64,000 nt of DNA, taken from positions 1 to 64,000 of the forward strand of contig NW_027363086.1 of NCBI RefSeq assembly GCF_046119375.1, in the 5' to 3' direction. This document shows, piece after piece, positions 29,001 to 60,179 of the stretch. The notes under the pieces are model-generated. The model was not told the DNA's origin. It saw nothing but the letters and a program-made list of their open reading frames with translations, and did no database searches. The position numbers were made by a program, and so were the translations under genes. The stretch is from Phyllobates terribilis. Taxonomy: Eukaryota. Within the stretch, counting starts at the first letter, position 1; the number at the start of each line of letters is the position of its first letter.

Positions 29001-31574
29001 GAAGGAGTTCAAGGAGGCCTATGACAGTGATGTATTTCTGGCCAATCCTCCTGCTGATATCAATCTCGTTCTTAGGAGTGACATGTGGTTCAGAGATCGA
29101 CGTATCTACGTCCCTGAGGCCGTCCGTCAACAGATCCTCAAGTTGGTCCACGACTCCAAGTTGGCTGGTCCCAGGGGGGTACAGAAGACACAAGAATTCC
29201 TAAACAGATTTTTCTGGTGGCCGACTTGCCTGAAGGATACTAAGGACTATGTGCTCTCTTGCGAGGTATGTGCTCGTTACAAGACTCCTCGTGTGTCACC
29301 TACGGGTCTTCTTCAACCATTACCTGTTCCGTCTCGTCCATGGGGGTCTATCTCAATGGACTTCATCGTGGAGCTGCCTATGTGGCGCCCAGCTGCGCTT
29401 GGTACTACAGATCCTAGAGGGTTGCATAGAAGGATTTCTCCACAAGAGGCCCCCACAGCACACACACACCTCCACCTTCCACCTCAGACCACCAGAGGGA
29501 GCCCGTTAGAGATATAAATAGGGAAGGTGGAGCTAGGCAGCTCAGTGATTCAGCAGTTCCTGCTCAGACACAGAAGTAGTCAGTGCAGTCGAGCCAGAGC
29601 CTAGCAGTTCCTGCAGAAAGAGTTCAGTATAGTCTGTAGAGTGAGTCCAGACTAGAACTCACAGAGCTCAGGATAGAGAGCTAGGAGTGTGCCGACACTC
29701 TGAGAGTGGCGAAGAAGAGCAGCGTCCTGGCTGCAGTGTGTGTAGCCTAGTGAGGGGCTGAGCGGGGCCGAAGGCGAGTGGAAAGGGAGTGGCATAGGGG
29801 GCAGAGAAGCTTAACCAGCTCACCCCGAAGCATATACCGGACACCGGGTCCGAGTCTACGTGGATCTTCATGACCAGTAGAAAACAACCGGAACCCCTGG
29901 CGAACTACATGTCCCAGGATCACCAAAAGCTGATACGTACCAGGGTCAGGAATCACGGAGACCCCAAAGAATAGGGAGAGTGATCTCCAACAGAAGGCCC
30001 TATCACCAAGTCAGCAGGTGCAGAGCAGAAACCAGGTTAGGTCTAGCTCCAGGCAGGTCAGAAACTTACTACAGAGAGGCAAGAGACAGGAGGCTCTACA
30101 CCCGCTCACTGGGGAGGATCTTGATATGCACCCTTCACCCTACAGTGCTCCAGGATGTGCCTGAACTTCCATCAGTAAAAGGTACTGAAGTGACTTTCGT
30201 GTGTGCTCCTATTCTTGCTCTGACCCTGCTGGGTCCCCTCTGTCCTGCATCCCCCTCCCTCCTACGCTGCCCTGAGGCCCTGCTCCACCTGTGGGGAGCA
30301 ATACCATCTAAGCTGCCACAACACCGGCCTCAGTGGACTGCTGCAGCGCTGGTGATCCTCACCAGGCACCACAGGTGGCGTCACGAACATTTACAAACCT
30401 ATTATCCCAATAGACATTCCCCTCTTTTCAGTTGTCCGCCCTGGGCCACGAACCGGGCCAGCCACCATGATATCCCCCAAACATCTGAGGGCCCGGCTGC
30501 CGAGTACCCCACGGCCCCGGGGGCGCGACAACTTCATCGGGTGGTATGAATACGATCCTGGTGATAGTTGATCGTCTGACCAAGGCTGCCCATTTTGTTC
30601 CTTGCACTGGCCTCCCCTCAGCTAAGGATACAGTGAAGTTGATTATACAAAATGTTTTTCGGCTGCATGGGGTCCTGGATGAGATCATCTCTGACCATGG
30701 AGTGCAGTTTACCTCAAGATTTTGGAAGGGGTTTTGCTCTGCACTCAATATTAATGTCTGTCTTTCTTCCGCTTATCACCCTCACACAAATGGCCAGACC
30801 GAGCGTACCAATCAGACTTTGGAACAATATCTAAGATGCTATATCAGCGATCTTCAGTATGATTGGTTGGAGCTTCTTCCATTAGCTGAATTCTCTTACA
30901 ACAACTCTCAGAGTGCCTCCACTAAGTTAACACCTTTCTTTGCCAATTTGGATTTTCATCCGAGTATTTTTCCTAGGTCTCCGATTAATGCTCCTGTTCC
31001 AGCTGTAGAGGAAAGGCTGACTGCAATGAGGCAAAATTTGGAGGTTCTGAAGGAATCTCTGACCTCGGCTCAGGAACGTTACAAAAGATCGGCTGATAGA
31101 TTCCGTAAACCAGCACCCATGTTTAAGGTAGGAGATTCCGTGTGGTTATCCACTAAAAATCTAAAGTTGAACTTTCCTTCACAGAAGCTTGGATAGAAGT
31201 TCATCGGTCCTTTCAAGATCAACGGTATTGTGAGCTCTGTGGCCTGCCGTCTGAAGCTGCCTAGGAATATGAAGGTACATCCAGTTTTTCATGTTTCCTT
31301 ACTGAAGCCTGTGTCTCCTAATACCTTCCAGGGACGTGTTGTGCCACCTCCACAGCCTGTAGTGATTGATGGGCAAGAGGAATTTGTGGTGGAGGAAGTG
31401 ATTAACTCTAGGACTCGCAGGAATCGGCTTCAGTATTTGAAAAGATGGCAGGGGTATCACCCTGAAGAAGACTCTTGGGAACCTGTGGAAAACATCAATC
31501 CCCATAAAAAGATTTCTCGTTTCCATCAAAGATTCCCTGAGAAACCGGGTCCAGGATCATCCTCAGGCTGCTAG
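26019..31574 (+). pseudogene. Element D gag-pol with several stops and frameshifts, split by solo LTR E
   Basis: ORFs 26019-26438, 26460-27464, 27591-28766, 28585-29380, 30546-31196 and 31230-31574 are collinear gag-PR-RT-RH-IN-chromodomain pieces. Confidence 0.9.
29381..30530 (+). mobile_element. Solo LTR 'E' (1150 bp) inside the integrase of D
   Basis: Ends tgtggcgccc / gggcgcgaca (9/10 inverted match); TATA-like tataaata near 29513. Integrase reads DFIVELP before the LTR and SGGMNTIL after it. Confidence 0.85.
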
Positions 31575-32106
31575 TAAGGAGGGAGTAATGTCAGGACTCT
31601 GAATGTTTCATTTTCTTTTGGGACATTTCTGCCCTTTTTCAAGATGGCATCTTCTGTATCATGTGCCCTTACCTCCTGCCCTTATAACTCCACCCCAGCC
31701 TCTAGTCCAGTGCTAGAGTATTTTGCCTGAGATCCTGGCTGTTTTGTGCAGGTTCCTCTGCACCTCTGCCCTCCATCTGCTTTGGCTCTCAAGTAAGCTG
31801 CTCTGAGTTCTCAGTCTCCTTATTCGGATGGTCGCTGAGCATGGGACTGGTCTGCACTGTCCGAGACTTTACCCGGGCCTCTTTGATTGCTTCTGCATTG
31901 TATGGACTTGCTGATATATAATGGTGAACTAACCTTGCAAAGACTCATTATTCTGTGAACTTAAGACTTTGAGATTTCTCTGCATTTTTGTGCAAAACAC
32001 TGTGTGCTTTAATATAGACTTTTCACCTATAAACTGTGTACTGTTGTGTCTTGCTCCACGCAAACACTTTCCTTAGTTATCCACTATAATTGTGACACTT
32101 CTTTAA

Positions 32107-38652: not shown

Positions 38653-39910
38653 AGGGATGCCCAAACTTTTACATGCCACTGTATATGTGTGTGTATGATT
38701 GTGTCCATGTGATTGCAACTGAAGTTTGTTTGTGAGACGCACAAGAGTTGTTTACATTAGAACAAGCTCACTGACAGATTCTCAGCTAACTCACTCTGCA
38801 GCCAGATGTGCAGGGTAATAAAGAGTCTGTAAAAGCCACACAGTGTAAAATTTGTAAGGAAATCCAATTTCAAGCAATATTTTTAGCTCTATTTACATGC
38901 ATTAAAGAAGTTATCCACTACTTGGACAACTCCTGTTTATACCCCACGCTTGGCCCCCGTAAAATAATAAAACTTATACTCCCCTCCAGTGCTGGCGCCG
39001 TTTCCGTGGTGTCAGAATTCGCTGTCCCCGGGGCTCACATTGTCTTGTTGTTGTGACATGTGACACCGGTGACAATCAGCGCAGGCGTCAATGTCTCTGC
39101 GTTCAGACAAATGGGACATGAAAAGGAAGGCAGAGATGAGCCGCATTCAGGGTCTCCTCTTCATGTTCGATTTGTCCAAAGGCGGAGACAGTGACGCCAG
39201 CACTGATTGGTCACGAGTGTCACATGTCACAATAACTGCACGAGAACCCCGGGACCGCGAGTGTCGACAGCGTGGGAACGGCGCCAACAAGGGAGGTGAT
39301 ATAGTTTATTTTATTTTATCATGGGAGGTGAGTAAGGCTGTGTGCCCACAATGCGTTTTTTAAGCGTTTCCGCAGCAGCAAAAACAGTGCAGAAACGCAT
39401 TAAAAACGCATGTTAGAAGGCCTGCCATGATCCCCAATGATAATCCGCGTGTGCTATGCACATGCTGCGGACATTTCTGCTGCGGATTATCATTGCGGAA
39501 AAAAACGCAGCACTATCAATTATTTTGCGGAAGCGCTGCATTTTCGCCGCCATTGACTTGCATTAGAATACGCCAATTCCGCAAGACTGCATCTGTACTT
39601 GCATAATTGGCGCGTTCTAATGTGCGGATGGTACCCGGGTGTAGAGGAGAAGAGAGTCTCATCCACACCCAGGTACCATTAAAAAAAAGCTGTAAAAAAA
39701 AGAATAAAATAAAAAATAAATATATACTTACCTTCCGGCGGCCCGCGCTGTGCTCCTCCTTACTTCCCGGCACTTCGCGATGGAATGAAGGACCTGCGCT
39801 GACGTCAGAGTCATGTGACAGGTCACGCGACGCTGACGCCGGCAGGTCCTTCAATCCACCGCTGCCGGCAGCCGGGACGGTGAAGCAAGACAGCGCGGGC
39901 CGTAAATATA

Positions 39911-41207
39911 CGAGGGCGATCCAAAAGTAATGATAATCAATACTAAACACAATGAATATAGTCAAAAATTTTTTTTATTTTTCTACATAGTCTCCTAACA
40001 AGTCTATACATTTAGTCCATCTCTTTTCTCAACTTAGAATTCCCTTCGAAAAAAATTCTTGATCTTGACCCTCAAAAAAATCCCCAACAGCTGTTATCAC
40101 GTCGCTATTGTCGTCAAATTTCTTGCCCCGGAGGTGTTCCTTGAGCCAAGGAAAGAGAAAGAAGTCACTGGGGGCTAGATCTGGCGAATAGGGGGGGGGG
40201 TTGTTCCACCAGTTCAAAGCCCGCTTCTTGTATGGTAGCCATGGCAACTGCAACTTTGTGAGCCGGCGCGTTATCTTGGTGAAACAGCACTCCAGCCTGC
40301 CGTTTGCCGCGCCTTTTCTCCTTGATAGCCTCCCGCAATCTTCTTATTTGTTCTGTGTAGTAGGAGCCCGTAATAGTGGCTCCCTTCTCCAAATAGTCCA
40401 CCATAATAATTCCTTCAGCGTCCCAAAAAACGGACGCCATAACCTTCCCTGCTGAGCTTGACACTTTGAGTTTCTTCGGTGTCAGTTCGTTGGCTCGTTT
40501 CCATGTCATCGATTGTTGTTTCGTTTCGGGATCAAAGTGGTGGATCCAGGTCTTGTCCATGGTCAAAAAACGTGACAAAAAATTCTCCTTGTCTGCTTGG
40601 AACTTTTCGAGACGTGCTCTTGAAATGTTAACTTGTTTCTTCTTTTGCTCGTCGGTTAACATTTTTGGCACCCAACGCGCCGAGACCTTTCTCATATGCA
40701 ATTCTTTTGCAAGGATTCTTTGAATACTGCCATATGAGATCCCTGTGACCTCCGCTACATGCCTGATAGTCACTCTTCGATCGGCCAATACAACTTCTTC
40801 AACTTTTTTCATGTTTTCTTCATTGAGGGACGTGGATGGGCGTCCTTCACGATGTTCATCTTCCGTCGATGTTCTTCCCAGCCTAAATTCCTTGGCCCAG
40901 CGTGCAACTGTGGAATATGGAAGAGAAAAGACCCCAACGTTTCCACCAAGTCGCTGTGTATGTCTTTGGTAGTAATTTTTTTCAAGCAGAGGTATTTGAT
41001 GACAGCTCTGAGCTCGTTTTTTTCCATTTTGATGTTCACTCCTCGGCAGTTCCTACTCAAATGAATGTAGCTCCCGTGAATCGTGGCCTATTTAAGTGAT
41101 TTTTTTTTCCTGGACTAGTGGGTACCTAAGAGAGAAGAAAACATTTTATTTTAATTTCTGTGTGCAATAGAAATAACCGATTATCATTACTTTTGGATCG
41201 CCCCTCG
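39911..41207 (-). mobile_element. Full-length mariner element (1297 bp, irritans/Hsmar2-like TIR)
   Basis: TIR cgagggcgatccaaaagtaatgataatc at both ends; TA TSD at 39909-39910 and 41208-41209. Confidence 0.93.
39975..41027 (-). pseudogene. Mariner transposase (DD34D type) with frameshifts and a stop
   Basis: MEKNELRAVIK, WVPKML, TMDKTW, HQDNAPAH, YSPDLAPSDF; frameshifts near 40925 and 40195. Confidence 0.92.
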
Positions 41208-41621
41208 TATATTTATTTTTTTATTTTTTGACATTCTCTCGGTCACACTATATAAATTCATGCCGGTTGCATGGATTTATATAGTGTGACCAAGTTGTCA
41301 AGCATTTTCCAAGTGATGCTAAAATCACAACCCGCATGCGGAAATGCAAGTGAAGAACGCTTCACATCCGCATGTCCCTGGCAGGAAAAACGCATGTACA
41401 ATCCGCATGTACAATCCGCATGTACAATCCGTATGCGTTTTTTTCTGCCAGGGAGATGCAGAAACGCTCAGGAAAAAATCCTGAGCATTTCTGCATCGTG
41501 GGCACATAGCCTATAGGTTGTTTTTTTTTTTATCTTATCAGGGTTCAACATTTTCAAATGAAAAGATTCATTAGGTGACTCTTTGTATCAAAGTACACTG
41601 AGTGTATATGCATGCACCGCA

Positions 41622-44735: not shown

Positions 44736-44994
44736 ATATATATATATATATATATATGCTTGTTTTTTTTCTCTTTATTTTTGAAATCTTTATATTTTAT
44801 TATTTTTTTTATATTAAAGAAAAACTTTTTTTGCTGAATTTGACCTCATTTTTAGTCCCTCTAGGGGACTTAAACTTATTGTTGTTCGATTGCTTATTAC
44901 ACTATATACTGCACTACCACGGAATTGACTGAGACTAATGCAATATTTTTACCGTCTTGTGTTTTTCTCCAGTGTTTGCAGGGCTCTGTTGAAC

Positions 44995-45202
44995 ATGGCA
45001 TCTCTCTTCAATTCCACCCCAAAAATGCCACTTCTATTAGAAGATGTGGAAAAAGGAAAAGACCAGCAAGATGAGGATGAAAACTGCGAAGAACAGGACC
45101 TGCACGCCCGGACTGGAGTCTCCATAGTCCGCTCTTTCATTATTGTAGGCGTTCTAACCTTCATCAATCTGGTCACCTTCATAGCTGCCTTCACTTTCGT
45201 AG
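44995..45202 (+). CDS. spns1: SPNS1-like coding exon 1
   Basis: MASLF...[30 protein letters not shown]; donor gtaagt. Confidence 0.85.
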
Positions 45203-48200
45203 GTAAGTAGGCGTAAACCGGCTTATGTCGGGGGCAAGGTGTATAAGGCCCAAAACTGCAAAAAAAGAAGAAAATCTTCATGGCCAACGAGAAGGCTCGT
45301 TAGCTGCTGTGATGTCTATTCCTGCACTTCTCTAATTACAATAATCATTCGTGTTCTTCTTTTTGTTCTGGCAGGAGCGATTTCTTACCTACAAAGCGCA
45401 TTTAAAATGGACGACAGCAAATCCGGCCTTATAAGCTTAGGTAAACTTTTAACATAAAATCCTATTCTATAGGTCACTTGTGAGGACGGCTGGAATCTCG
45501 TGACATCATAAGGTTCCAATTTTGTAACGTTCACATGATGGCCGCCTTTATAGTTACCAAAAATGCAAACAGTGATGAGGACGGGAGAAGTGTTTTCAGT
45601 GCAACAGTTTAAATAATCCTCAAATATAAATAAATATATGTTAAAGAAATCATTTCTATTAACTGTGACCTCTTGTTTTTCCCCTTCTAGTATTCACGAT
45701 CAGCAGTGTCCTGTTTGGTCAAATCTATGGATACCTGGGTGACCGCTGGAACAGAAAATACATCATGTGTGCAGGGATGTCCTTCTGGTCGGCCATCATT
45801 CTCTGCAAGTCCTACGTTCCCAATGAGGTAACTGATCTAATTGGTAGAAGCATAAAGACTTAAGGCTCATGCAGACGTCTGTGGATCTCGGTGCCATCAT
45901 GGACAATAATGCACGGACTGGCCGCGGTTCTTCCGACCCGAGCATCGCTATCACGCTGTCAGAGATCGGACCGGGATCCACCGACGTCTGCATGAGCCCT
46001 AAAGCCTCTCACTTGTTTGTATGTAGATCAGTATTTTGCATTAGTATTTGCAAGACAAAAGTGAGAGCGGGTCCAAAATTAGGAAAAGTTTATAATTTTT
46101 CCATTACCGTATTTCTTTAGGTGTCTTAGAAAACTTTCATAAATGGTCACTGAATATTTTTTTGTGTTTTCACAGTATTTTACAGTTTTTCTCCTAATTA
46201 ATGGACTGTCTGGAGCTGCAGAGGCAAGTTTTAAAATAACTGCCCCCTCCATCATTGCCGACGTCTTCGTGGGAGATCGGCGCAGCCGCGCGCTTAACTT
46301 GTATTACTTAGCAGCACCCTTTGGCTGGTGAGTGTACATCTATTTATTGTTTTAAGGAGGGAATCATAGCCAAACTGTCTAAGAGTAAGTCCGACAAGGC
46401 GGATTTGCTGTGGACTTTTTTCGGTACGGATTTTGCTCTACAGATGCATGTACAATACATATGGATGGCGTTTCAAAAACCCCTCCGCAAGTAATGATCA
46501 TGGTGTCGCAACACGTAGGGGGAGGATCAGCAGTGAACCAGCAAACATTTCTGGAATTGCTGCAGATTTCTAGGAAATTGATTCAAGACTCTAAATGGAA
46601 ATATTTTTTCAGCAATGTCAAGACTTTCCCTAACAGAAAACTGCACTGATTGCTATGGGCAAAAAAGTTTTCTGCTAGACAGTTTGACTTTTAGCACTTA
46701 TGACAAGAGCTCCTCAAAGAATGTGAAGACTCAGAATGATCTTACACTTTTTATTGTTTTTTTATAAATCATTTAAATGGACATAGGAAATGTTGTAATA
46801 TATCTTATCAGGAAATATACTTATTTCCCTTCATTAATTCACTGATAAAAATCCATCTTCAGTGACAAGACAGATTGTAGCTTTATGCGGCATGGGGTAA
46901 CAGTTGCTGCTCATAGAAGTCTATGGAGGGGGTGGAGTAGGAAGGAGGAGCCGGAAAAAGGCACTCAAAAATGTATATGTTTATATGTGTGCAGAAATTA
47001 TGACAACTTTGTTTTTGTTTTTTACAGTGGCCTTGGTTACATCATTGGGTCTAAAGTGACAAGTGCATTTGGTGGCGCCTGGCAATGGGCCTTCCGGGTA
47101 AGTAATAGGTCTGAGGGATCTTGTGGACAAACTGTGAATCTTAATTATAATTCCTGAATCGTATTAAAGGGAATCTGGCAGTATGTTTTTCCATTTGATC
47201 TGAGAGCAGGGGCCCTGTAGGGGCAGAGCACCTGATTCCAGCGATGTGTCACTTACTGCTCCTTGTAGATGCTTTAAAAAAAAAATCACTGTTTTATTAG
47301 CAGGAGATTATGACGAGGGGACTAGTTGTCTCGTGCCATGTAGTCCTCCTGTTCTGTGTAACCCCGACCCCACCACTGATTGGTGGCTTTCTGCCTATGT
47401 ACAGTGTGCACAGAAAAATCTACCAATCAGTGGTGTAGGCAGGGTATACAGAGCTCAGCATTCAGAGTACTGCTAGATCTGCAGCGAGAAAACTGGGATT
47501 TTATCAATACTTCACCAAGCACACCAGCAAGTGACACATCGCTGGAATCGGGGTCTCTGTCCCTGCATTATGCTGCTCTCAGATGCGCAGCAAACACCTC
47601 GTCGCAGATCCCCTTTAATGGAACCAGTTCCACAACAGTCTGTGCTCATGTCCTTTTTGTGATGAAACCTCTGTATATGTGATATGTGATGTCTCCTTCT
47701 TCATCTACACAGATCATCTCTGCTCTGGGCCTGGTAGGAGTCCTGCTCATGGCTGCATTTGTAAAAGAACCGTCCAGAGGAGCTGCAGAGGAAAAGAACA
47801 AACCACTGAGCTTCAAAGGATGGCTTATGGATGCCAACCAACTGCGTAAAAAGTAGGTGTCTTCTGTGCATTGATTTATGTCACTGATCTCCCCCGTGAC
47901 TTCTGCGTCATTTACAAGTTTTTTACCCTTTTCTCTCTCTGCAGCCGAAGTCTTCTGTTTTCTACTCTTGGGACTATTATGGTAAAATTTGTGGCAGCTG
48001 CATTCGGCTTCTGGGCTGTTACTTTCCTGAAGCGTGCCCGGGCTCTCATGCTACAGAAGGCGCCATATCAGACTCAACTATCCAACTATGATGACAGGTA
48101 CAAGTTTAGCAAACTTTAATTTGACATTCACTGGTGGGAATTTAATTCCCCCTATGACCGTTTTCTCTCTAAAAAAATATATTTATATTTCAAATTATTA

Positions 48201-51200
48201 TTATATCAAATTATTTATATTTCATTTCTTCAAGCTACTTTACTAATCTCTTTACCGCTTTTCTTTGCAGTCTGATTTTCGGAGGACTTACGGTCATCTC
48301 TGGCATCCTTGGAGTTGGAACAGGGGCGGAGATAGCCAAGAGATGCAGGAAGTACAACCCTCGTGCTGACCCTATAGTTTGTGCGGTTGGATTGCTGGGC
48401 TCCGCCATTTTCCTGCTGTTGGCTATTATTCTTGCAGACATCAGCCTTGTGGCCACTTATGTAAGTACCTGGAGTACAGATTGCTTTCATCCCCTTACTG
48501 GGTCTCGGCTATAGGACCGAGCAGTAGAAATCATAGACTATGGCGGGGGCTGTCTATGAATGTACGGAGACTGGGGTGGATGAATGGATTATAAAGACAA
48601 AACCTATGGGGGATAGGAAAGCGTGCAAGACACAAATGTTTATATGTATTGTTCTTTACTCTCTGCAGGTGTTTATATTCATCGGGACCATATTTCTGAG
48701 CCTGAACTTTTCAGTTTCAACTGATATCCGCCTGGTGAGTGGAGAAAAGCGCTAAACTTATCATAGCTATAATTATATGTATGTAGTCAGTCTCTATGTT
48801 CTGTTTTTACCCATCAAATGCCCCATAATCCTGGCTGTGCCCAAGCGTCTGTTGGGTAATTCCCAACTAAAAATAAACCTGGCGCAAGATGATTAAAAAC
48901 TTCTTTAGTAAAATCTCAGTCCACAACATGTCTGGGCTTCTTATCTATCCTGGCTGATTGTGCATTTAAAGGGGTTGTCCACTACTTTCACATTGATGCC
49001 CTACCCGTAGGATATGGCATCAATGTAGGATGGCCGGGGTCCCGCACGCGGCACCCCCGGCGATCAGCAGTTATTGGTATCTGCAGCGGCTGCCACCGGC
49101 CGGAGGGGCTTACCTGCGGTGTTTGGCCGTCAAGTTATAGTGGTCACCGCGGTGTACTGCACATCCACCTCCTATTCAATTGACTTGAATAGGTAAGGAC
49201 TTCCGGCTGGTGGCAGCCGCCGCCGGCACCGATAACTGCTGATCGGAAGGGATGCCGCATGCGGGACCCCGGCCGATCATACATTGATGCCCTATCCATA
49301 GTGGACAACTTCTTTAACTTAGGCTTCAAGTATGTTCACTTTGTCCATGTTCTCTTGTCTCGTTGGGTTCAGTGACTCCTTCTGCTCATTCAGAATATTC
49401 TCTTGTTTCAGTATGTGGTTTCTCCCACAAGGCGATCAACAGCACAGGCGTTATCGATGGCGGGGTCCCACCTGCTGGGGGAAGCTGGAAGCTCCTATTT
49501 CATCGGGCTAGTAAGTAGCTGTTACATATTCTCACATCACTTTAGGGCTACATTCACACATCTGTTTCCATTTGTACATTGTCGCAAAACAGACCATTTT
49601 TCTCTTGTGTCATCTGTTTTTTTAAAAAGTGAAGGTGGTAGACTGTCCAAACTTTATTTATCCATTGACTCTTAATAATGGATCAATGAAAAATGGATGA
49701 AACACAGATGGAAAACTGAAGTACAAAGTATATCATCCTTTCTCCATCCATTTTTAACAGATTCCTATAGACTAGAAATAGTAACCCCAGTTTTAATTTT
49801 TATTTCATAAATCAATAGTACAGTACACATGAAAATAAGAAACGTTGGAATATATCTTTTCAGAGAAATCTGCTTCTTTCTCCTCTCGAACTGATCGTTT
49901 ATTCTCAAAGTTCTCACTGTATTCAGTGAAGCATTACTGGGATAGGAGATGACAGTTGGTGCTTATAACATTCTATTTAGAGGAAAGAGGGAGGAGCTAG
50001 AGGCAGGCTCCCCCCATGTACATAGAATCTGATCAACAGCAATTGTCATCTCCTATCTCAGTAATGTAAAAATCTGTCTTCACTGATTACAGATTTTATC
50101 TGTGAATTAAGAATGTTATAAATTAATGGAGGAAAAATAAGCAGATTTATCTGATAAGATCTACCACAAAGTTGCTTATTTTCACGTGTACTGTATTGAT
50201 TTTATAACGACAGTTACTCTTTACTGGCCAAGTCTGATCCGCAGAACGGATGAGAATAGGACATGCTCTGTCACAGTGGAGTTTTTAAAACTCGCTGTAG
50301 CCTATTCATAACATACTTAAAAGGGTTCACCGGGACTATTTGATTTTTTTTACTATGGGCTAACAGGCAAGTCGTTGCTAAATACCTGCCTGTAGTGCCC
50401 GGGACCGATCTCTGCCAACACCCGCGATTCAGTGGCCTCCCCTGATATCACGTTGACAGAGCAGCATCTTCTCTTCCGCTCTGTTGACGGGGTGGCAGAA
50501 CTCCAAAGACAAGATGTCCTGGAGTTACGTCACAGATTATCTGCTGAAGAAGGATGTCACAAGTGTCCTGTTCCCAGACAATGTGTAGTACTGGAGCTGC
50601 GGATACTGGAAGCATTGCTGTTCATAGTTTGGAGGAGCCGCTATCTGCAGTGAGGCACCTTCTCTTTCTATGATCACCAGATTTCATTGGTATCCATTGA
50701 CTGCTGTCAGCATAAACGTGTCCAGTCAATTATGTTTTTTTACTTTCATTAACCATACATAATTATTTATCTCGTCTCATCTTCAGATATCCGACCGCAT
50801 CAAAAGTTACAATCCAGACTCGGCTCTTTCGAACTTCCGCAGTCTGCAGTACGCCCTCATGGTTTGCCCCTTTGTGCTGGTTTTCGGAGGAGGATTCTTT
50901 TTCGCATGCGCCCTCTTTGTTGAAAATGATCGTAAGAAGGCAGAGACAGAGTCTGAAGGTACGTGCAGAAATAAGTTAATTATCCGATCATATCTCTTAC
51001 AGAATTGGATTAGCATTAGCTCCATAATTAGTAAATGTAATACCCAGCATCTGTATAATACATCCATCCCCATAACAAAGCTCCATAACATAACATTAAC
51101 AAAGCTGCATAACATAACATTAACAAAGCTGCAATTAACTTATTATTATGGCATAAATAGTTTTATCCTAAGGCTATGTGCCCACGATGCAGAAATGCTC

Positions 51201-54200
51201 AGGATTTTTCCTGAGCGTTTCTGCATCTCCCCTGGCAGAAAAAACGCATGCGGATTGTACATGCGGATTGTACATGCGGATTGTACATGCGTTTTTCTGC
51301 CAGGGACATGCGGATGTGAAGCGTTCTTCACATGCATTTCCGCATGCGGGTTGATAAGCGCTTTCCAAGCGATTTTAGCATCACTTGGAAAGTGCTTGAC
51401 AACTTGGTCACACTATATAAATCCATGCAAACGGCATGGATTTATATAGTGTGACCCCAAAGAATGGTTAAAAATAAAAAAATAAATATATACTTACCTT
51501 CCGATGGCCCCGGCAGTCTTGCTTCACTCCGTCCTGGCTGCCGGCAGATCGCGGTACACTGAAGGACCTGCCAACGTCAGCATCGCGTGACCCGTCACAT
51601 GGCTATGACGTCAGCGCAGGTCCTTCAGTCCACCGCGATCTGCCGGCATGGGAGGACGAGCGCACCGCGGCCCGCCGGAAGGTAAGTATAACATATATTT
51701 TTTATTTTATTCTTTTTTTTACAGGTACTATGGCACCTGGGTGTGGATGTCTCCTCTCCTCCACACCCGGGTACCATCCCCACAATGGAACGCATACATC
51801 TACATATACAGTGATGCGGAGTCCATGCGGTCTAATGCAAGTCAATGGCGGAGAAAACTCAGCGCTTCCGCAAAATAATTGGTAGTGCTGCTTTTTTTAC
51901 GCAATGATAATCCGCAGCGGAAATTTCTGCAGCATGTGCACAGCACATATGGATTATCATTGGGGAACATGGCAGACCTTCTACCATGCGTTTTTTAAGC
52001 GTTTCTGCAGCGTTTTTGCCGCTGCGGAAACGCTTAAAAAACGCATCGTGGGCACACAGCCTAAGTGTGACCCTACCCTACTGATATGGGGCTGATTATA
52101 TGACATAAATTGTATTTGAAAAAATCTGCTATGTCTTTTTGGTGGAATCTACTTTTAAGAGAACCTGTCACTCGCCATAAATATACATTTATTTTAACCC
52201 GGTATAAATGCTGCTATTCTCCTGAATACGGCATTGTTTGTCTCTTGTTCTCAAATCTCCTTGTTCCTGATAGGTCTCCCTGCTCCCTATACATTTATCC
52301 ACTATTTTAGCCAACTGGCCGTTGTCATCAAGATGTTTCTCAAAAAGAGAAGTTTTTGAGGGTCACGCCCACTTGGCAAAAATAAATACAAATACTAGAT
52401 TTACATAAAGGGAAAAGGGGGCAATTTCTCAGGAAATTAGAATCTTGAGGAACAAAGGATGAACAATGCCAGATTCAGGAGAACAACAGGATTTACAACG
52501 GGTAAAAAATGGTAAATGTCGGATCATCTCGTTCAATTGTTTTTACTTAACATTTACAAAAAAAATAACATTAAGAAGGAATATAAATTGGGGAGGGGAA
52601 AAAGGAGTAATGGGGTAACAATGGGAAGTTACAGGAGAGAAAGTAAAGGCAAGGCTAGTCATTATTATTAGTAATAAACAACTATTATAACTTTGACCAT
52701 AATATGTGTAAACAATTAGTTTGGTATATATCCGGTATTGTTTGTTTATACAACTATTTTAGTTTTTAAGTTTTGGGTTTAGCCTGAGTAAAAAAAAACT
52801 CTTCCACTATGGCATTCATCTAACTAAATATCAGCTACAACATTTTTTCACTAATCGCAAAGTTGAACTTTAATATTGTGCGTTGATGCCTTTCCATTAC
52901 TTCTAATATTGATGGAGGAATTATTTGCTTCCATTTTGTTGCGATTAAATGTTTAATCACCAAAAAGATATGACAAGAGATATGTTGAAATTTGGGTGGG
53001 ATTTCTTCTAGACCTTGTGATAATAATATTAATTGTGGTGTAAGTGGAATATTGGGTTTAGAAATTCATAGGAGTAAGTTCAAAGTTTCTTTCCATAATT
53101 CCTTTATGGACAACTCCAAAATATGTGTAAAATGTCTCCCGGTTTAGCACAACCTCTCCAGCATAGAGGAGGTTGGGAAGGAAATGCTCTGCGGGGTCTC
53201 ATTGGAGTAAAGGAGCACCGCAGCATAATGTTATAGTGCGTCTCTTGGAAACACGTAGTGGCACAATATGTCAGGTTTAATGCTTTACTGTACATGTAGA
53301 TAATCCTTCTGTATCATTTTATATCAAATAATTTAATTTTATTTCATCTTTATAGACTTTGTCCTGAAGGAGGTAATATCTACAGCTCCATAAATTAGAA
53401 CTTTTTAAAGCTGGACCTGAGGAAAAATGAAAGGTAAGATAAGATGGGAATAGTCAACTTTAACTTTTTTAATTTTTGGTAATGAGAATATATAATTTGA
53501 GAATATAATTTGAGTGGGTTTTCAGATCCTATTATTTCAGAGTTAGAATTTTTAGTTTCTTTCCAGGCCAGGTATCTCTTCTTAGAACTATTCAATCCTT
53601 TTACAAGAGGAGATAAAATATTAAGTACCAATTTTATTTTTTTAAGGGGATGAGTGATAATACCAGATGGGAAATATATTAGTTATACAACCATATAAAT
53701 CATCGTATAAAACTGTACACTTGTTAAACTACGTTTTGCTTCTTTTGTTGGAGACAGTGGCTCCAGCTTTGCGGCACGAATCATCACGTTGTACATTCAA
53801 TGTCCGTTCCGGCTATGACAACTTGCTGGAGGTCCTAGATTCATTGGGGATCTGCAGGGGTTTGTCTGACATCTTTAAGTTCCTGGATGTCTTTTAATGT
53901 TTTAGAAATACTTGATCTTTTACTAAAGCTAAAATAGTGGGGAGAAGATCCTTTACAGTAAAAATAGTTCTATTTAGATCTAGCTTTATTAACGCTACAT
54001 AATCAATAATTTATTTTTTAATTTAAATTTATAGATTTAAAAAATTGCACTCATGTACTTCTTAGATATCCATGAAATGCTTAGTGCCGGCCAATATGAA
54101 ACATTCTGGGTTTAGGAATCCAGTGGGTGGTCTCAGATCTCACATAGTGATTGTCAGCCCCCTCTATATGAATGGGGGGTACAGTCCTAAACTAAGAATA

Positions 54201-54391
54201 AGCCAATATCACTTATCTTAAATCTTTTCTCACAAGGCTAGAAATCAGTAACCAGGAGTACATTGCCTGCCGCTTATATATGATATCCAGTTGTTTCATC
54301 TTCAGTCATATTTATTATTTCTACAGATCACTATTCCGGAGAGAGGCCTGATTGTGATCCGTCAATGAACAAAGAATCCAGCCGGATGTGA
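44995..54391 (+). CDS. spns1: Spinster homolog 1-like MFS transporter (diverged paralog), 12 coding exons, about 505 aa
   Basis: Exons 44995-45202, 45375-45440, 45691-45827, 46176-46327, 47028-47097, 47713-47852, 47945-48097, 48271-48460, 48669-48734, 49412-49510, 50787-50958 and (tentative) 54327-54391. All introns are GT-AG, phases are consistent, total 1518 nt. Motifs [47 protein letters not shown] and SHLLG match SPNS1 best (recalled sequence). Confidence 0.88.
45375..45440 (+). CDS. spns1: SPNS1-like exon 2
   Basis: [22 protein letters not shown]; 66 nt, flanked by AG and GT. Confidence 0.85.
45691..45827 (+). CDS. spns1: SPNS1-like exon 3
   Basis: [34 protein letters not shown]...VPNE. 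Confidence 0.92.
45863..45999. mobile_element. Small Harbinger-type MITE in intron 3
   Basis: TIR ggctcatgcagacgtc / gacgtctgcatgagcc with tta/taa flanks. Confidence 0.7.
46176..46327 (+). CDS. spns1: SPNS1-like exon 4
   Basis: [38 protein letters not shown]...PFG. Confidence 0.92.
47028..47097 (+). CDS. spns1: SPNS1-like exon 5
   Basis: [23 protein letters not shown]. Confidence 0.92.
47168..47614. mobile_element. TTAA-target MITE in intron 5
   Basis: ttaa|agggaatctg...cagatcccct|ttaa. Confidence 0.7.
47713..47852 (+). CDS. spns1: SPNS1-like exon 6
   Basis: [26 protein letters not shown]...[10 protein letters not shown]. Confidence 0.9.
47945..48097 (+). CDS. spns1: SPNS1-like exon 7
   Basis: [10 protein letters not shown]...[11 protein letters not shown]...YDDS. 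Confidence 0.9.
48271..48460 (+). CDS. spns1: SPNS1-like exon 8
   Basis: [39 protein letters not shown]. Confidence 0.93.
48669..48734 (+). CDS. spns1: SPNS1-like exon 9
   Basis: [22 protein letters not shown]. Confidence 0.9.
48970..49313. mobile_element. TTAA-target MITE in intron 9 (same family as 24967-25376)
   Basis: ttaa|aggggttgtccact...gtggacaacttct|ttaa. Confidence 0.85.
49412..49510 (+). CDS. spns1: SPNS1-like exon 10
   Basis: [33 protein letters not shown]. Confidence 0.93.
50787..50958 (+). CDS. spns1: SPNS1-like exon 11
   Basis: [38 protein letters not shown]. Confidence 0.93.
51172..52061. mobile_element. Harbinger-type MITE in intron 11
   Basis: TIR ggctatgtgcccac / gtgggcacacagcc; TAA TSD at 51169-51171 and 52062-52064. 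Confidence 0.85.
52535..54300 (-). mobile_element. Degenerate L1-type LINE 3' fragment in intron 11; boundaries approximate
   Basis: [19 protein letters not shown] is the C-terminal Cys motif of L1 ORF2; many stops in flanking frames. Confidence 0.6.
54327..54391 (+). CDS. spns1: Candidate terminal exon 12 ([21 protein letters not shown])
   Basis: Acceptor tttctacag in the correct phase 1, TGA at 54389-54391. No recognisable homology to the known SPNS1 tail. Confidence 0.45.
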
Positions 54392-57547: not shown

Positions 57548-58327
57548 ATGTCGTTCACAACCTTTGCCTTTAATCAGGAAGAAGCAAGTGGAATACTTGC
57601 ACATGTCACAACTCCCGTTACATTTCTCCACACCCCCACTGAGGAAGTACGCATAAGGGACCTAAAGAAGGAACAAAGGAGGTATACCGCTTTGGATCTA
57701 CACTGCGTTACTCTCGCAGAATATCACAAAACACAACGAATTCCACGAGGATGAAGAGTCAACCTACGTCCTACTCTATTTATTGATAACTCTGATTATT
57801 GCAGTAAGTTCGAGGGGATCCTCAACAAATGCTCAATGGACATTATTGTGTTGACAATTGATTTTCTCCAGAAGGAAATAACCAATCTACATACTAGGAT
57901 TGCCTCTACTGAGCAACAATTGAGTAATACGATTTCATCTGAAGAATTTACAACACTGAAAAACAAAGTGGACAAAACCATTTCTGATTCTGAATATCGC
58001 AACGAACTCCAGATCCAGAAAAAATCTAAATTTCTATGTGACGCTGAAAACTACCTCAATAATCAAGTGTATAGATGGCGCTCTTCAGATCAAGGCAGAA
58101 GCAGCAGATCATACAGGCGAGGATACAACTCTTCTCCAGGCCGACACTCCTCTACAGACAGCAAACGAGGTACCTATCAACCAAATTATTTTTTGGATCA
58201 ACGCAGAAACCGTCCACCAAGAATAAGACGAGGCGGGGGAGGCGATCGACAGACAGACAACGCTCGGATGACAACTCGTTCTCGGGTAGGACTAACATCG
58301 TGTATAACATCTTCTCACAATCCTTAG
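57548..58327 (+). pseudogene. PLE2 upstream ORF/N-terminal domain (IPRG motif, coiled-coil-like, RS/RG-rich tail), one internal stop
   Basis: ORFs 57512-57754 and 57836-58327 are in the same frame, separated by TGA at 57752-57754. Confidence 0.7.
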
Positions 58328-60179
58328 CACCGGCCGAATTAGACCTATTGCAAAAAGGTCTTTCATTTAGCCCTACACCTGCCTTTGATACATTCCAACT
58401 GGAGCAAGAACTACAACGCTTTTATAGAACCTTAAGATTGAAAGTCCATTTTTCCTCTGGTAGGGGGCTTACTACTGATCCTCCAGGTGCCTCTCAGAGC
58501 AGCCAGAATGATGGAATGTTCTCTTTACATGGCTTGAAACTGCGTATTCCTAGCCATTTCCAACCGCCTTGTACATATTATCATGTAGAGACATATATTG
58601 ACTTGGTCCAGAAAGACATTAATGAAGTCCTACAAGCCATAAAGAGAGGCGATCTGCATAACAAAAATAACCTCAACCCTGAGGAAAGTATGGCCCTCTC
58701 CTCATTGAAAAAAAGGAAAGAACTTATTGTAAAACCAGCTGATAAGGGGGGAGCAATTGTTATTATGGACCGGTCTTATTATATATCAGAGATATACACT
58801 CAATTGAATGATACTGAAACGTATCTACCTATAACACGTAACCCCACCACAGAGGTAGCTAATTTAATTAAAAATTTAGTCTCACATCATGCTCAGAGAG
58901 GCACAATCGATTCCAAACTGTCAGAATTTTTGGTCAATCCAAACCCAATAATGCCGGTATTTTATACCTTACCCAAAATACACAAGAATCTATGGGCACC
59001 ACCCGGGAGACCTATTGTAGCCTCTACAGATTCTATTTTGTCACCCTTGGCTATTACATTAGAAAAAATTTTAACACCCCATATTCAGAAGATTACCTCA
59101 TACCTTAAGGACACTACCCATTTTTTGACATGCATAAGAGAATTAGGACCAATCCCTACTAACAGCATCCTAACAACAATGGATGTCAACAGTCTCTATA
59201 CTAGTATCAATCACCAGTAGGGCATTTGTGCCACAATAAAATTTGTAAGAGCCCATACTACATTCTCAGCCGATCAGATTGACTTTTGCAGTGATTTATT
59301 AACTTTGATCCTCACCAAAAATTTTTTCATGTTTGAAGATCGTTTTTTCTTTCAAAAGAGGGGTACGGCGATGGGCTCCAATGTGGCACCCCCCTATGCC
59401 AATATCTTCATGGGGAATTTTGAGATAGATCATGTATATACTCACCCTCTGTTTGAAAAGCATGTGCTATGCTGGAGACGTTTTATTGACGATATTTTCT
59501 TTATTTGGACTGGCACAAGACAAAACTTAAAAACTTTTTTTGATGACCTTAACAGCAAACTTACTAATCTGACATTTACCATACACCAAGACCCACATTC
59601 CATACGTTTTTTGGACACACGGATTACACTCGTTGACACAGGATATCTAGTCAGTGACTTATACACAAAACCAACAGATAAAAACAGTCTATTGTTGTAT
59701 TCCAGTTCTCACCCGGGCCATATTAAAAGGTCATTACCAAAATCACAACATAATAGGGTGGATCGAATAGTGTCTACTGCAGATTCTAAAAAAATTAGAC
59801 ATGAGGAGATGAACGACAAATTTCGACAGAGGGGTTACCCATCACATATCTTGAACCAGGTCACCCAACCTACTTCACGACGGAATAATAACTCACGACT
59901 GACTTTCGTGAACACCTATCACCCCTTTGGGGGACAGATATTCAAGTGCATTAAAAATATTGGTCCCTGTTACGGCAATCTTATCCGGATATAGAGAAAT
60001 TTACCGATGTCCCCCTACTATGTCATAAAAGATCCCGAAACATTCGCGACCATTTGGTTAGAGCCGACGTGGGATCTACAAATAAGGGACCAATCCAACG
60101 CACCTTGGCCACCCCCCGGAGGGGAACTTTCCCGTGTCTAGGATGTTTACAGTGTTCAAATATTACTAAGGGTGACACT
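58270..60179 (+). pseudogene. PLE2 reverse transcriptase region with a stop (59218-59220) and a frameshift (about 59985)
   Basis: VYNIFS..LQKGLSFSPT, LPKIHK, MDVNSLYTSI, GTAMGS, FIDD. Confidence 0.88.

What the first reader, a model, noticed from the sequence alone, without database searches (positions are those of the whole stretch)
44995..50958. Intact SPNS1-like transporter with a remodelled substrate site (NYMDR to TFIAA)
Eleven exons splice into an open frame with SPNS1-type exon sizes and phases, so the gene looks maintained. Yet the TM1 motif INLLNYMDRF of SPNS1 reads [10 protein letters not shown], removing Asp75 and Arg76 (human numbering, recalled). Arg76 is implicated in lysophospholipid headgroup binding, as is the equivalent Arg in SPNS2 for S1P. 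Other polar positions also change (TRG to ING, GET to GTI, NW to NF), while the Asp94, Glu164 and His427 equivalents are kept. Inference: a duplicated, proton-coupled spinster paralog that has lost the anionic-headgroup contact and may carry a different, more neutral or cationic substrate. It would be a candidate lineage-specific transporter.
Basis: partly seen in the sequence, partly recalled or inferred. Interest (0 to 1): 0.7.

Follow-up and report, generated by a model that had tools for sequence, protein, structure and literature searches.

The report
Poison-frog SPNS1 paralog, remodelled pocket
This is one copy of a recently multiplied, fast-evolving extra copy of the lysosomal lipid exporter gene SPNS1 in the golden poison frog; it keeps the transporter's moving parts but has lost the arginine that SPNS1 needs to carry lysophospholipids, so it probably carries something else.

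Summary
Eleven GT-AG exons (44995-50958, + strand) give an open 484-codon frame. That frame is identical to the first 484 residues of RefSeq XP_073524703.1, "protein spinster homolog 1-like", of Phyllobates terribilis. A short last exon (51003-51013) or exons derived from transposable elements (TEs) finish the gene.

- **TM1 motif:** it reads [10 protein letters not shown] where 22/22 canonical vertebrate SPNS1 read INLLNYMDRF.
- **Other changes:** R157N, E392T and W399F are also real. D94, E164 and H427 are kept.
- **Separate canonical gene:** the frog has its own canonical spns1 (XP_073504788.1).
- **Origin:** the gene belongs to a paralog clade that split from spns1 in hyloid frogs and evolves fast.
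- **Asp-Arg loss:** it is shared by Phyllobates, Ranitomeya and Anomaloglossus.
- **Copy number:** P. terribilis carries at least about 15 near-identical copies.
- **What is kept:** fold, gating salt bridges, luminal gate and TM5/TM8 lipid gate.
- **Literature:** R76A abolishes LPC transport in human SPNS1.

My best reading is a working amphiphile transporter with a changed head-group site. The substrate is unknown, and proton coupling is uncertain because of E87Q.

Selection evidence is indirect: open-frame maintenance, conservative replacements and rate heterogeneity. I could not compute dN/dS because no DNA of other copies was obtainable. Expression rests on one spliced contig.

The parts
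44995..45202 (+). Coding exon 1. Holds the start codon, the acidic N-terminal tail and TM1, with [15 protein letters not shown] in place of the canonical INLLNYMDRFTVAG. Codons 45183-45188 (GCT GCC) encode Ala-Ala at D75/R76.
   Evidence: A contig in run X1 matches 45015-45164 with 0 mismatches.
45375..45440 (+). Exon 2. Luminal loop and start of TM2. Gln at E87; D94 and S97 are kept.
45691..45827 (+). Exon 3. TM2-TM3 with MFS motif A ([11 protein letters not shown]); R121 is kept.
46176..46327 (+). Exon 4. TM4 with R157N (ING for TRG); E164 and D177 are kept.
47028..47097 (+). Exon 5. TM5 lateral-gate residues P196, G200, L201, Y203 and I204 are all kept.
47713..47852 (+). Exon 6. TM6 and the start of the central loop.
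   Evidence: Same boundary as canonical frog SPNS1 contig L001.
47945..48097 (+). Exon 7. Amphipathic linker and TM7; D263 and R300 are kept, A291G.
   Evidence: An X2 contig joins this exon to exon 8 with 0 mismatches.
48271..48460 (+). Exon 8. TM8-TM9; D321, S322, G326 and V337 are kept. This is the best-conserved exon.
   Evidence: (human SPNS1 2.7e-17, SPNS2 about 1e-13)
48669..48734 (+). Exon 9. TM10 with E392T and W399F (GTIFLSLNF for GETLLSLNW).
49412..49510 (+). Exon 10. TM11; R415, H427, Y436 and S442 are kept, D431E.
   Evidence: An X2 contig holds exactly this exon between other flanks.
50787..50958 (+). Exon 11. TM12 and the start of the cytosolic tail. It ends in phase 1 at a GT donor.
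51003..51013 (+). Candidate last exon (…E-L-D-stop) of the annotated 487-aa isoform, reached through an unusually short 44-nt intron (50959-51002).
   Evidence: No read evidence was obtained.
54320..54388 (+). Alternative downstream exon ([20 protein letters not shown]…) used in the RefSeq isoform XP_073524703.1.
57563..59991 (+). Stretch that supplies the C-terminal exons of the long RefSeq isoforms. It overlaps ORFs of a Penelope-like or other TE, so these isoforms are probably chimeric or read-through models.

Best explanation
**What it is.** The locus is one copy of a recently amplified array of 'SPNS1-like' genes in the golden poison frog Phyllobates terribilis. The family arose by duplication of spns1 in an ancestor of hyloid frogs. 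The canonical gene was kept elsewhere and stayed almost unchanged, while the extra lineage evolved several times faster and duplicated repeatedly.

**What changed.** In the dendrobatoid branch (Phyllobates, Ranitomeya, Anomaloglossus) the central-cavity head-group site was rebuilt:
- TM1 Asp75-Arg76 became Ala-Ala, Ala-Thr or Ala-Ser.
- TM4 Arg157 became Asn or Lys.
- Tyr73, Trp399, Glu392 and Asp431 also changed.

**What was kept.**
- the 12-helix MFS fold and motif A;
- the interdomain salt bridges D177-R415 and R121-D263;
- the luminal gate D94-R300-S442;
- E164 and H427;
- the TM5/TM8 lateral gate (G200, L201, Y203, I204, S322, G326) through which SPNS1 admits the lipid tail.

**Inferred mechanism.** It is a rocker-switch MFS transporter that still takes an amphiphile with a hydrophobic tail through the TM5/TM8 cleft. 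It can no longer hold a phosphate head group the way SPNS1 holds LPC, so it has a different substrate. With Gln at E87, and without the conserved C-terminal tail, its pH dependence and its sorting may also differ.

**Shown versus inferred.** Shown: gene structure, paralogy, residue states, copy number, fold prediction and one spliced transcript contig. Inferred: that it transports at all, its substrate class, and its location in the cell.
For: **Gene model.** It is identical to the RefSeq protein.

**Paralogy.**
- A canonical spns1 is present in P. terribilis. It is 56% identical to this protein.
- In the ML tree the paralog ('L') clade of 22 sequences has 100/99 support. It sits inside hyloid SPNS1, after Pseudophryne.
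- The window gene groups with Ranitomeya (100/99) and then with Anomaloglossus (96/87).

**Residues.** The residue table is.

**Literature.**
- R76A, E164 mutants (E164A/E164K) and H427A abolish or reduce LPC transport (PMC9546575, PMC10115416).
- SPNS2 Arg119 and His468 hold the anionic head group. Arg200 braces the TM1 backbone, and R200S is null (PMC11739509).
- D94, R300 and S442 are the proton-sensing gate, and TM5/TM8 is the LPC entry (PMC11725778).

**Maintenance.**
- Neutral codon simulations to the observed 33% amino-acid divergence from Ranitomeya expect 9.2 stop-creating hits. None of 300 simulations stayed stop-free.
- Replacements are more conservative than neutral: mean BLOSUM62 is -0.21 against -0.60 ± 0.13.
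- Among-site heterogeneity in six dendrobatoid L proteins exceeds neutral simulations. The variance of states per column is 1.05 against 0.80 ± 0.05, and the invariant fraction is 0.293 against 0.253.
- Five R. variabilis copies that differ by 5-12% are all annotated at full length (493-496 aa).

**Fold.** AlphaFold2 gives pLDDT 85.2 and pTM 0.84 with 12 TM helices. The best structural matches are SPNS2 and SPNS1, with target-normalised TM-scores (TMt) of 0.86-0.90. Pfam MFS_1 scores 122.9 bits.

**Where the changes sit.** Changes at canonical-invariant sites concentrate in TM1/2/4/7 (38/79) and spare TM5/8 (5/29) (the grouping was chosen post hoc).

**Expression.** A contig in run X2 joins exon 7 to exon 8 with no mismatch.
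Against: - No dN/dS could be computed.
- Constraint is clearly relaxed. 34% of the sites invariant from fish to mammals are changed (66/195).
- Since the split from Ranitomeya, canonical-invariant sites differ almost as often as variable ones (27% against 36%, p = 0.045).
- H427, kept here, is Asp in Ranitomeya, so even the 'kept' triad is not stable in the clade.
- In human SPNS1, R76A is simply a null mutation.
- Expression evidence is thin. It is one spliced contig from a run whose RNA status is a guess, and it cannot be assigned to this copy. No full-length L-type transcript appeared among Logan proteins.
- The AlphaFold alignment is dominated by canonical sequences, so confidence in the fold is partly inherited.
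- The near-identical copies may in part be uncollapsed haplotypes.
Confidence: 0.55

Rival explanations
1. Redundant duplicates under relaxed constraint. After the hyloid duplication the extra copy lost SPNS1 function (natural R76A, R157N, loss of the C-terminal tail). It survives only because segmental duplication in TE-rich DNA keeps producing young, still-open copies. The protein has no useful transport activity.
For: - 66 of 195 canonical-invariant sites are changed, and invariant and variable sites diverge at nearly the same rate.
- L-clade branches are long (0.3-0.8 against 0.03-0.1 for canonical SPNS1).
- R76A and R200S equivalents are null in human proteins.
- RefSeq isoforms fuse to TE exons.
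- There is little transcript evidence.
- The copies are near-identical and recent.
Against: - Open frames are kept across Phyllobates, Ranitomeya and Anomaloglossus at 33-45% divergence, where neutral evolution expects 9-14 stop hits.
- Replacements are conservative and rates differ among sites.
- Gating and lateral-gate residues are retained selectively.
- The fold is predicted with confidence.
- Ala75 is fixed in six of seven dendrobatoid sequences.
Confidence: 0.25
2. A maintained protein whose role is not bulk transport. It could be a sensor or 'transceptor', a regulator or dominant partner of canonical SPNS1, or a fast-evolving decoy or interaction surface in a host-pathogen conflict. Fast evolution together with copy-number gain is typical of such genes, and SPNS1 is a host factor for at least one virus.
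For: - The family evolves fast and gains copies repeatedly in several frogs.
- There is an excess of hypervariable columns: 11.9% have 4 or more states against 7.1% in neutral simulations.
- SPNS1 is a host factor for EV-A71 (title and abstract of PMC12718360).
Against: - The residues that drive the alternating-access cycle are kept, which a mere decoy would not need.
- I did not map the hypervariable sites to exposed surfaces.
- There is no evidence of any pathogen link in frogs.
Confidence: 0.1
3. A host gene captured and spread by a mobile element. On this view the copy number reflects transposition rather than organismal function.
For: - About 890-bp repeats lie in inverted orientation on both sides of the gene.
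- Hyla sarda has 274 members about 98% identical (median of 15 sampled), and those sampled lie on at least 6 large contigs.
- The P. terribilis copies lie on several scaffolds.
Against: - Each flanking repeat is a complete element with its own terminal inverted repeats, so these are two separate insertions, not the ends of one element.
- The P. terribilis duplication unit extends beyond the right repeat, because the copies share the downstream TE exons.
- All 11 introns are kept, so these are not retrocopies.
- The window holds only one copy in 64 kb.
Confidence: 0.07

Closest known systems
Canonical vertebrate SPNS1 (SLC63A1), the lysosomal proton-dependent LPC/LPE exporter; human structure 9BOI
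   Same: - It nests inside the frog SPNS1 clade and is 56% identical to the frog's own SPNS1.
- The predicted 12-TM fold matches 9BOI at 47% identity and TMt 0.88.
- Exon boundaries are shared where tested.
- These residues are kept: D94, S97, R300, S442, E164, H427, D177, R415, R121, D263, G200, L201, Y203, I204, S322 and G326.
   Different: - D75A and R76A; R76A is a null mutation in human SPNS1.
- R157N, Y73F, E87Q, E392T, W399F and D431E.
- The conserved C-terminal tail (…RGRSTKVPVSSVLI) is absent.
- 34% of universally invariant sites are changed.
- It is multi-copy.
SPNS2 (SLC63A2), the sphingosine-1-phosphate exporter
   Same: - Best Foldseek matches, with TMt 0.86-0.90.
- Gln at the E87 position, as in SPNS2 Q130, which the literature links to lack of pH dependence.
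   Different: - SPNS2 keeps Asp118-Arg119, Arg200, Tyr116, Trp440 and Asp472; this protein changes all of their equivalents.
- The tested exons match human SPNS2 chains less well than human SPNS1, and the full-length search returned only SPNS1-type proteins. No SPNS2 sequence was in the tree.
SPNS3 (SLC63A3); no established substrate as far as I know
   Same: It is a spinster-family member that has also lost the TM1 Asp-Arg. Carlito SPNS3 reads NYMNWF. This is a precedent for a family member maintained without this motif.
   Different: - SPNS3 forms a separate, well-supported clade (100/100).
- It keeps R157 and W399 but loses E164, the opposite pattern to this gene.
Other hyloid 'SPNS1-like' paralogs (Rhinoderma, Bufo, Eleutherodactylus, Leptodactylus, Hyla)
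   Same: They belong to the same duplication-derived clade. They share Gln87 and the truncated C-terminus, evolve fast, and are often multi-copy.
   Different: Most keep Arg76 (DR, ER or NR) and Arg157. Full loss of both residues is confined to the dendrobatoid branch.

Membership tests
Major facilitator superfamily | Pfam MFS_1 above the gathering score, with a 12-TM fold of two six-helix halves | tested here: met
   MFS_1 scores 122.9 bits against a cut-off of 33.4. The AlphaFold2 model has 12 TM helices, pLDDT 85.2. Foldseek hits are all MFS transporters.
Major facilitator superfamily | Motif A in the TM2-TM3 loop (G-x-L-x-D-R-x-x-R-K) | tested here: met
   [11 protein letters not shown] is in exon 3 and R121 is kept.
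Spinster / SLC63 family | Closest sequence and structure relatives are SPNS proteins | tested here: met
   Exons 4 and 8 hit only SPNS1 and SPNS2 chains at significant E-values in the PDB. The full-length search returns SPNS1 proteins. The top 14 structural matches are SPNS2 and SPNS1.
SPNS1 orthologue (lysosomal LPC/LPE exporter) | One-to-one orthology with vertebrate spns1 | tested here: not met
   A separate canonical spns1 (XP_073504788.1) lies on another contig. The gene sits in a duplication-derived clade.
SPNS1 orthologue (lysosomal LPC/LPE exporter) | Substrate triad R76 / E164 / H427, required for LPC transport | tested here: not met
   R76 is Ala; E164 and H427 are kept. The requirement comes from PMC9546575 and PMC10115416.
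SPNS1 orthologue (lysosomal LPC/LPE exporter) | Invariant TM1 segment N69-G81 and TM4 R157 | tested here: not met
   The segment is 22/22 invariant in canonical sequences. Nine of its 13 positions are changed here, and R157 is Asn.
SPNS1 orthologue (lysosomal LPC/LPE exporter) | Five-residue luminal proton-sensing network E87, D94, S97, R300, S442 | tested here: inconclusive
   Four of the five are kept. E87 is Gln, as in SPNS2. E87A is still active in human SPNS1, but Q130E/A140S confers pH dependence on SPNS2.
SPNS1 orthologue (lysosomal LPC/LPE exporter) | TM5/TM8 lateral lipid gate (P196, G200, L201, Y203, I204, S322, G326, V337) | tested here: met
   All eight are kept in the window protein. 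Their roles are described in PMC11725778.
SPNS1 orthologue (lysosomal LPC/LPE exporter) | Conserved cytosolic C-terminal tail | tested here: not met
   The tail …IVVP..RGRSTKVPVSSVLI is missing in the dendrobatoid and most other L-clade proteins shown. Only Leptodactylus keeps a divergent longer tail. The window isoform ends …ETESEELD.
SPNS1 orthologue (lysosomal LPC/LPE exporter) | Lysosomal localisation and LPC/LPE transport at acid pH | not testable with these tools
   This needs expression and uptake assays.
SPNS3 | Placement in the SPNS3 clade | tested here: not met
   SPNS3 sequences form their own clade (100/100), outside the tetrapod SPNS1 group that holds this gene.

The most novel reading that the evidence does not exclude
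The dendrobatoid SPNS1-like genes may be transporters for lipophilic amines rather than phospholipids. That would make them candidates for moving or clearing dietary alkaloids, or other cationic amphiphiles that get trapped in acidic organelles.

What does not exclude this reading:
- They keep the lipid-tail gate and the acidic E164, but they have lost the phosphate-binding arginines.
- They have multiplied to about 15 or more near-identical copies in the most toxic poison frog.

What speaks against it:
- The same remodelling is found in Anomaloglossus. From my own knowledge, this frog belongs to a family (Aromobatidae) that is not classically chemically defended.
- Related paralogs that still have Arg76 have expanded in non-toxic hyloids.
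- No expression data from skin, liver or gut were available.
Probability: 0.07. Interest if true: 0.85.

Novelty: new variant of a known kind. Interest (0 to 1): 0.55.

Why it matters
**For the transporter field.** SPNS1 is otherwise one of the most rigidly conserved lysosomal transporters. The TM1 segment is identical from fish to mammals. Here is a natural series of paralogs in which the head-group site is taken apart step by step: DR, then ER or NR, then NS, then AS, AT or AA, with R157 going R, then K, then N. The gating machinery and the lipid-tail gate stay. This offers a ready-made set of variants for asking which residues set substrate choice in the SLC63 family. It may also say something about what SPNS3, which lost the same motif, might do.

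**For frog biology.** The finding flags an undescribed, amplification-prone transporter family in hyloid frogs, and a specific testable candidate in poison frogs. As far as I know, the membrane transporters that handle their lipophilic alkaloids are still unknown.

**For annotation.** The RefSeq name 'spinster homolog 1-like' hides the fact that the protein cannot work like SPNS1. Several annotated isoforms are chimeras with transposon exons.

Tried and rejected
- **Exon 1 against the PDB.** It gave no spinster hit, and Pfam on single exons was weak. The full protein became usable only after the representative search returned the annotated protein.
- **Tandem copy inside the window.** Rejected; tblastn finds a single copy in 64 kb.
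- **SPNS3 orthologue.** Rejected by the tree.
- **Composite transposon bounded by the inverted repeats at 39335-41517 and 51167-52062.** Rejected. Each arm is a complete element with its own terminal inverted repeats, and the left arm carries a nested mariner-like element.
- **dN/dS.** The look-up of encoding contigs returned no DNA for P0154, P0153, P0183 or P0283 because the sample files are too large.
- **Exon-sized word searches.** Searches with exon 1 and exon 8 found nothing.
- **Logan contig L001.** The one contig I obtained (L001) turned out to be a canonical frog SPNS1. It served only to check exon boundaries.
- **Sequencing runs.** Only three small runs of one study held parts of the stretch. 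Most depth fell on intronic repeats, and only a few low-depth contigs touch exons.
- **Invariant against variable site test.** It gave only a marginal signal for the closest pair, so I added codon simulations.
- **Literature.** Searches for spinster with poison frogs, and for 'spinster homolog 1-like', found no paper.
- **Full protein as typed letters.** I did not type the spliced 484-aa protein into any tool. I used the stored ids P0001:1-484 and P0283, which differs from the window at one residue (T400A).

Full report
**1. What is in the sequence**

Reading 44800-51200 on the + strand and splicing by eye and by script gives eleven exons, all with AG acceptors and GT donors. Their coordinates are 44995-45202, 45375-45440, 45691-45827, 46176-46327, 47028-47097, 47713-47852, 47945-48097, 48271-48460, 48669-48734, 49412-49510 and 50787-50958. 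Joined, they make 1453 nt with no stop codon and encode 484 residues.

The window has no N. tblastn of the model on the window finds only this one copy. The rest of the 64 kb is transposon sequence: Ty3/gypsy-type, Penelope-like, LINE-type and mariner-like ORFs.

**2. Identity**

Single exons match only spinster proteins among solved structures.
- Exon 8 scores 2.7e-17 to human SPNS1 (9BOI) and about 1e-13 to SPNS2.
- Exon 4 scores 6e-10 against about 1e-6.

The exhaustive representative search with exon 8 returned a 671-aa protein that is 100% identical over the exon. Its first 484 residues equal my model exactly. It is RefSeq XP_073524703.1, 'protein spinster homolog 1-like [Phyllobates terribilis]'. 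So the gene is already annotated, and the organism is the golden poison frog.

The annotated isoforms differ only after residue 484.
- A 487-aa form ends ELD. In the window this needs a 44-nt intron (50959-51002) and exon 51003-51013.
- Longer forms splice to 54320-54388 and into exons at about 57563-58168 and 59677-59991. These overlap transposon ORFs and are probably read-through chimeras.

**3. The motif**

In an alignment of 22 canonical SPNS1 sequences from ray-finned fish to mammals, positions N69-G81 (…NLLNYMDRFTVAG) are invariant. The window protein reads [13 protein letters not shown].

I calibrated human numbering on mammalian sequences against residues named in the literature.
- Also changed: Y73F, E87Q, R157N (TRG>ING), E392T (GET>GTI), W399F (NW>NF) and D431E.
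- Kept: D94, S97, R300, S442, E164, H427, D177, R415, R121, D263, P196, G200, L201, Y203, I204, S322, G326 and V337.

**4. What those residues do (literature)**
- R76A, E164A or E164K, and H427A abolish or strongly reduce LPC transport by human or mouse SPNS1 (PMC9546575; PMC10115416).
- In SPNS2 the equivalent Arg119 and His468 are proposed to hold the anionic head group, with Tyr116, Trp440 and Asp472 as further contacts.
- Arg200 (SPNS1 R157) braces the backbone of Asp118/Arg119, and R200S is null (PMC11739509).
- D94, with R300 and S442, is the proton-sensing luminal gate.
- E87 and S97 distinguish the proton-dependent SPNS1 from the uniporter SPNS2.
- The salt bridges D177-R415 and R121-D263 stabilise the outward state.
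- LPC enters between TM5 and TM8, lined by G200, L201, Y203, I204, S322 and G326 (PMC11725778).

The window protein has therefore lost four of five head-group contacts (Y73, R76, W399, D431; H427 stays), and also the arginine that braces TM1. It has kept the parts that make the transporter cycle and the cleft that admits a lipid tail.

**5. Paralogy and history**

The same genome encodes a canonical 'protein spinster homolog 1' (XP_073504788.1, 522 aa) on a 418-Mb contig. It has the standard motifs and is 56% identical to the window protein.

A maximum-likelihood tree of 50 sequences puts all 'SPNS1-like' frog proteins in one clade (100/99). That clade branches inside neobatrachian SPNS1, after Pseudophryne and next to the hyloid canonical genes. 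The duplication therefore dates to an ancestor of hyloid frogs.
- Canonical terminal branches are 0.03-0.1 substitutions per site. Paralog branches are 0.3-0.8.
- Within the clade, the window gene groups with Ranitomeya (100/99), then with Anomaloglossus (96/87). A second P. terribilis paralog on a 985-Mb contig joins next (100/99).

The state at D75/R76 follows the tree.

| Lineage | D75/R76 |
|---|---|
| Rhinoderma, Bufo, one Eleutherodactylus copy | DR |
| Leptodactylus | ER |
| Hyla, the other Eleutherodactylus copy | NR |
| Second P. terribilis paralog | NS |
| Anomaloglossus | AS or AT |
| Ranitomeya | AT |
| Window gene | AA |

R157 is R in most of these. It is K in Anomaloglossus, in the second P. 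terribilis paralog and in Bufo, S in Hyla, and N in Phyllobates and Ranitomeya.

The loss is thus old, stepwise and shared by Dendrobatoidea; it is not a private defect. All but one L-clade protein (a Leptodactylus copy) also lack the conserved C-terminal tail of SPNS1. A precedent exists in the family: primate SPNS3 reads NYMNWF and has Ser at E164.

**6. Copy number**

The 90%-identity clusters hold 23 RefSeq accessions of this gene type from P. terribilis. They lie on a 258.8-Mb chromosome and on scaffolds of 3.14 Mb, 2.13 Mb, 656 kb (the window's) and 192 kb. They differ from the window protein at 0-2 residues (A2V, N58S, D82N, A126V, V134I, N136K, T326A, S383T, T400A).

Each contig has several distinct sequences, four of them on the window's own scaffold. 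That gives a minimum of about 15 loci if every scaffold is real, and about 4 if the scaffolds are haplotigs of one array. The copies share the downstream transposon-derived exons, so the duplication unit exceeds 13 kb.

R. variabilis has at least five copies that are 88-95% identical, all on one chromosome. Hyla sarda has a cluster of 274 members. The 15 members sampled are a median 98% identical and lie on at least six large contigs.

**7. Is it maintained?**

I could not obtain DNA of any other copy or ortholog, so no dN/dS was computed. Indirect tests gave the following.
- **Open frame.** Neutral codon simulations that start from the window CDS and run to the observed 33% protein divergence from Ranitomeya expect 9.2 stop-creating mutations. 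None of 300 simulations stayed stop-free.
- **Kind of replacement.** Observed replacements are milder than neutral ones. Mean BLOSUM62 is -0.21 against -0.60 ± 0.13, and -0.22 against -0.67 ± 0.11 for Anomaloglossus.
- **Rate heterogeneity.** Across six dendrobatoid paralogs at matched divergence, the variance of states per column is 1.05 against 0.80 ± 0.05 (0 of 400 simulations reach it). The invariant fraction is 0.293 against 0.253 (P about 0.02). There is also an excess of hypervariable columns.
- **Constraint is much relaxed.** 66 of 195 sites that never vary in canonical SPNS1 are changed. Since the Phyllobates-Ranitomeya split, such sites differ almost as often as variable ones (27% against 36%, p = 0.045).
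- **Where the changes fall.** They are not spread evenly. 38 of 79 invariant sites in TM1/2/4/7 are changed, against 5 of 29 in TM5/8. I chose this grouping after seeing the data, so it is descriptive only.

**8. Fold**

AlphaFold2 with a 79-sequence alignment gives pLDDT 85.2 and pTM 0.84 with twelve long helices. Foldseek's best matches are SPNS2 and SPNS1, with target-normalised TM-scores (TMt) of 0.86-0.90. The bacterial spinster homologue and other MFS lipid or choline carriers follow. Pfam MFS_1 is well above threshold. The alignment is mostly canonical sequences, so this shows the sequence is compatible with the fold, not more.

**9. Expression**

Only three small runs of one study held parts of the stretch. 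Their RNA status is a guess.

Laid on the gene, one contig of run X2 joins 48094 to 48268 with no mismatch. This is the exon 7-exon 8 junction; the cut is ambiguous by the shared CAG. Another X2 contig holds exactly exon 10 between foreign flanks, with two mismatches. Run X1 has unspliced pieces and an exon-1 piece (45015-45164, no mismatch) that stops short of codons 45183-45188.

So some copy of the family is transcribed and spliced. Level, tissue and copy are unknown. The Ala-Ala codons were not covered by reads, but the same residues occur in every annotated copy.

**10. Interpretation**

The best-supported reading is a maintained but fast-evolving MFS transporter. It still cycles and still admits a hydrophobic tail through TM5/TM8, but it cannot bind a phosphate head group as SPNS1 and SPNS2 do, so it has a different substrate.
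- Proton coupling is open: D94, R300, S97 and S442 are kept, but E87 is Gln.
- The charge argument for a cationic substrate is weak, because two acidic residues (D75, E392) were lost together with two basic ones (R76, R157).
- Rivals are decay under relaxed constraint, a non-transport role, and selfish spread.
- I examined the inverted repeats around the gene as a possible sign of a mobile unit. They are two separate insertions of one roughly 890-bp element.

**11. Novelty**

The gene model is in RefSeq. I found no paper on these paralogs. The remodelled site, its stepwise history, the hyloid-wide family and the amplification appear undescribed. I file it as a new variant of a known kind. The link to alkaloid handling in poison frogs is attractive but unsupported. 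From my own knowledge, Anomaloglossus belongs to a family (Aromobatidae) that is not classically chemically defended, and it shows the same remodelling.

Noticed in passing
Proteins P0216 and P0303-P0316 (Hyla sarda): The Hyla sarda 'spinster homolog 1-like' cluster has 274 members at 90% identity or more. Fifteen sampled members are a median 98% identical, and the members read lie on at least six large contigs (192-621 Mb). All fifteen carry YANR in TM1. This looks like a very recent genome-wide burst of a cellular transporter gene. The mechanism (segmental duplication, retrocopies or carriage by an element) is unknown.
   Followed up: partly
window 39335-41517 and 51167-52062: Two copies of one roughly 890-bp element with terminal inverted repeats (AGGCTRTGTGCCCACRATGC…) lie in opposite orientation on either side of the gene and are 83-90% identical. 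The left copy is split by a nested mariner-like element at 39903-41215, which has 36-37-nt inverted ends and the transposase ORF 40165-40812 (-).
   Followed up: yes
window 54320-54388, 57563-58168, 59677-59991: RefSeq isoforms of this gene and of its sister copies (651-706 aa) extend the transporter with exons taken from transposon ORFs downstream, such as MDIIVLTIDFLQKEITNLH…. These are probably read-through or chimeric models, not a real domain fusion.
   Followed up: partly
window 50959-51002: The 487-aa isoform needs a 44-nt intron, which is very short for a vertebrate. Without splicing the frame stays open to about 51098. The true 3' end of the coding sequence is unsettled.
   Followed up: no
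window 47184-47581, 48776-49372, 49771-50168, 45791-45989: These intronic stretches have contig depths of hundreds to more than 20,000 in all three runs, so they are high-copy repeats. Those at 45860-46000 and 49032-49274 are hairpin (MITE-like) elements.
   Followed up: no
window 1-8000 and 23000-31600: Two Ty3/gypsy-type retrotransposons are present. One has a 1137-aa pol ORF at 1060-4473 and a second, broken copy at 5515-7875. The first 8 kb are GC-rich (0.53-0.57) compared with 0.35-0.49 elsewhere.
   Followed up: no
Protein P0049 (Carlito syrichta SPNS3): Mammalian SPNS3 has Asn-Trp at the D75/R76 position and Ser at E164, but it keeps R157 and W399. A second spinster-family branch has therefore dispensed with the Asp-Arg motif independently.
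   Followed up: partly
Search result: No Phyllobates/Ranitomeya-type SPNS1-like protein from Dendrobates tinctorius appeared among the listed hits, although its canonical SPNS1 did. This could be loss, non-annotation or a limit of the search.
   Followed up: no
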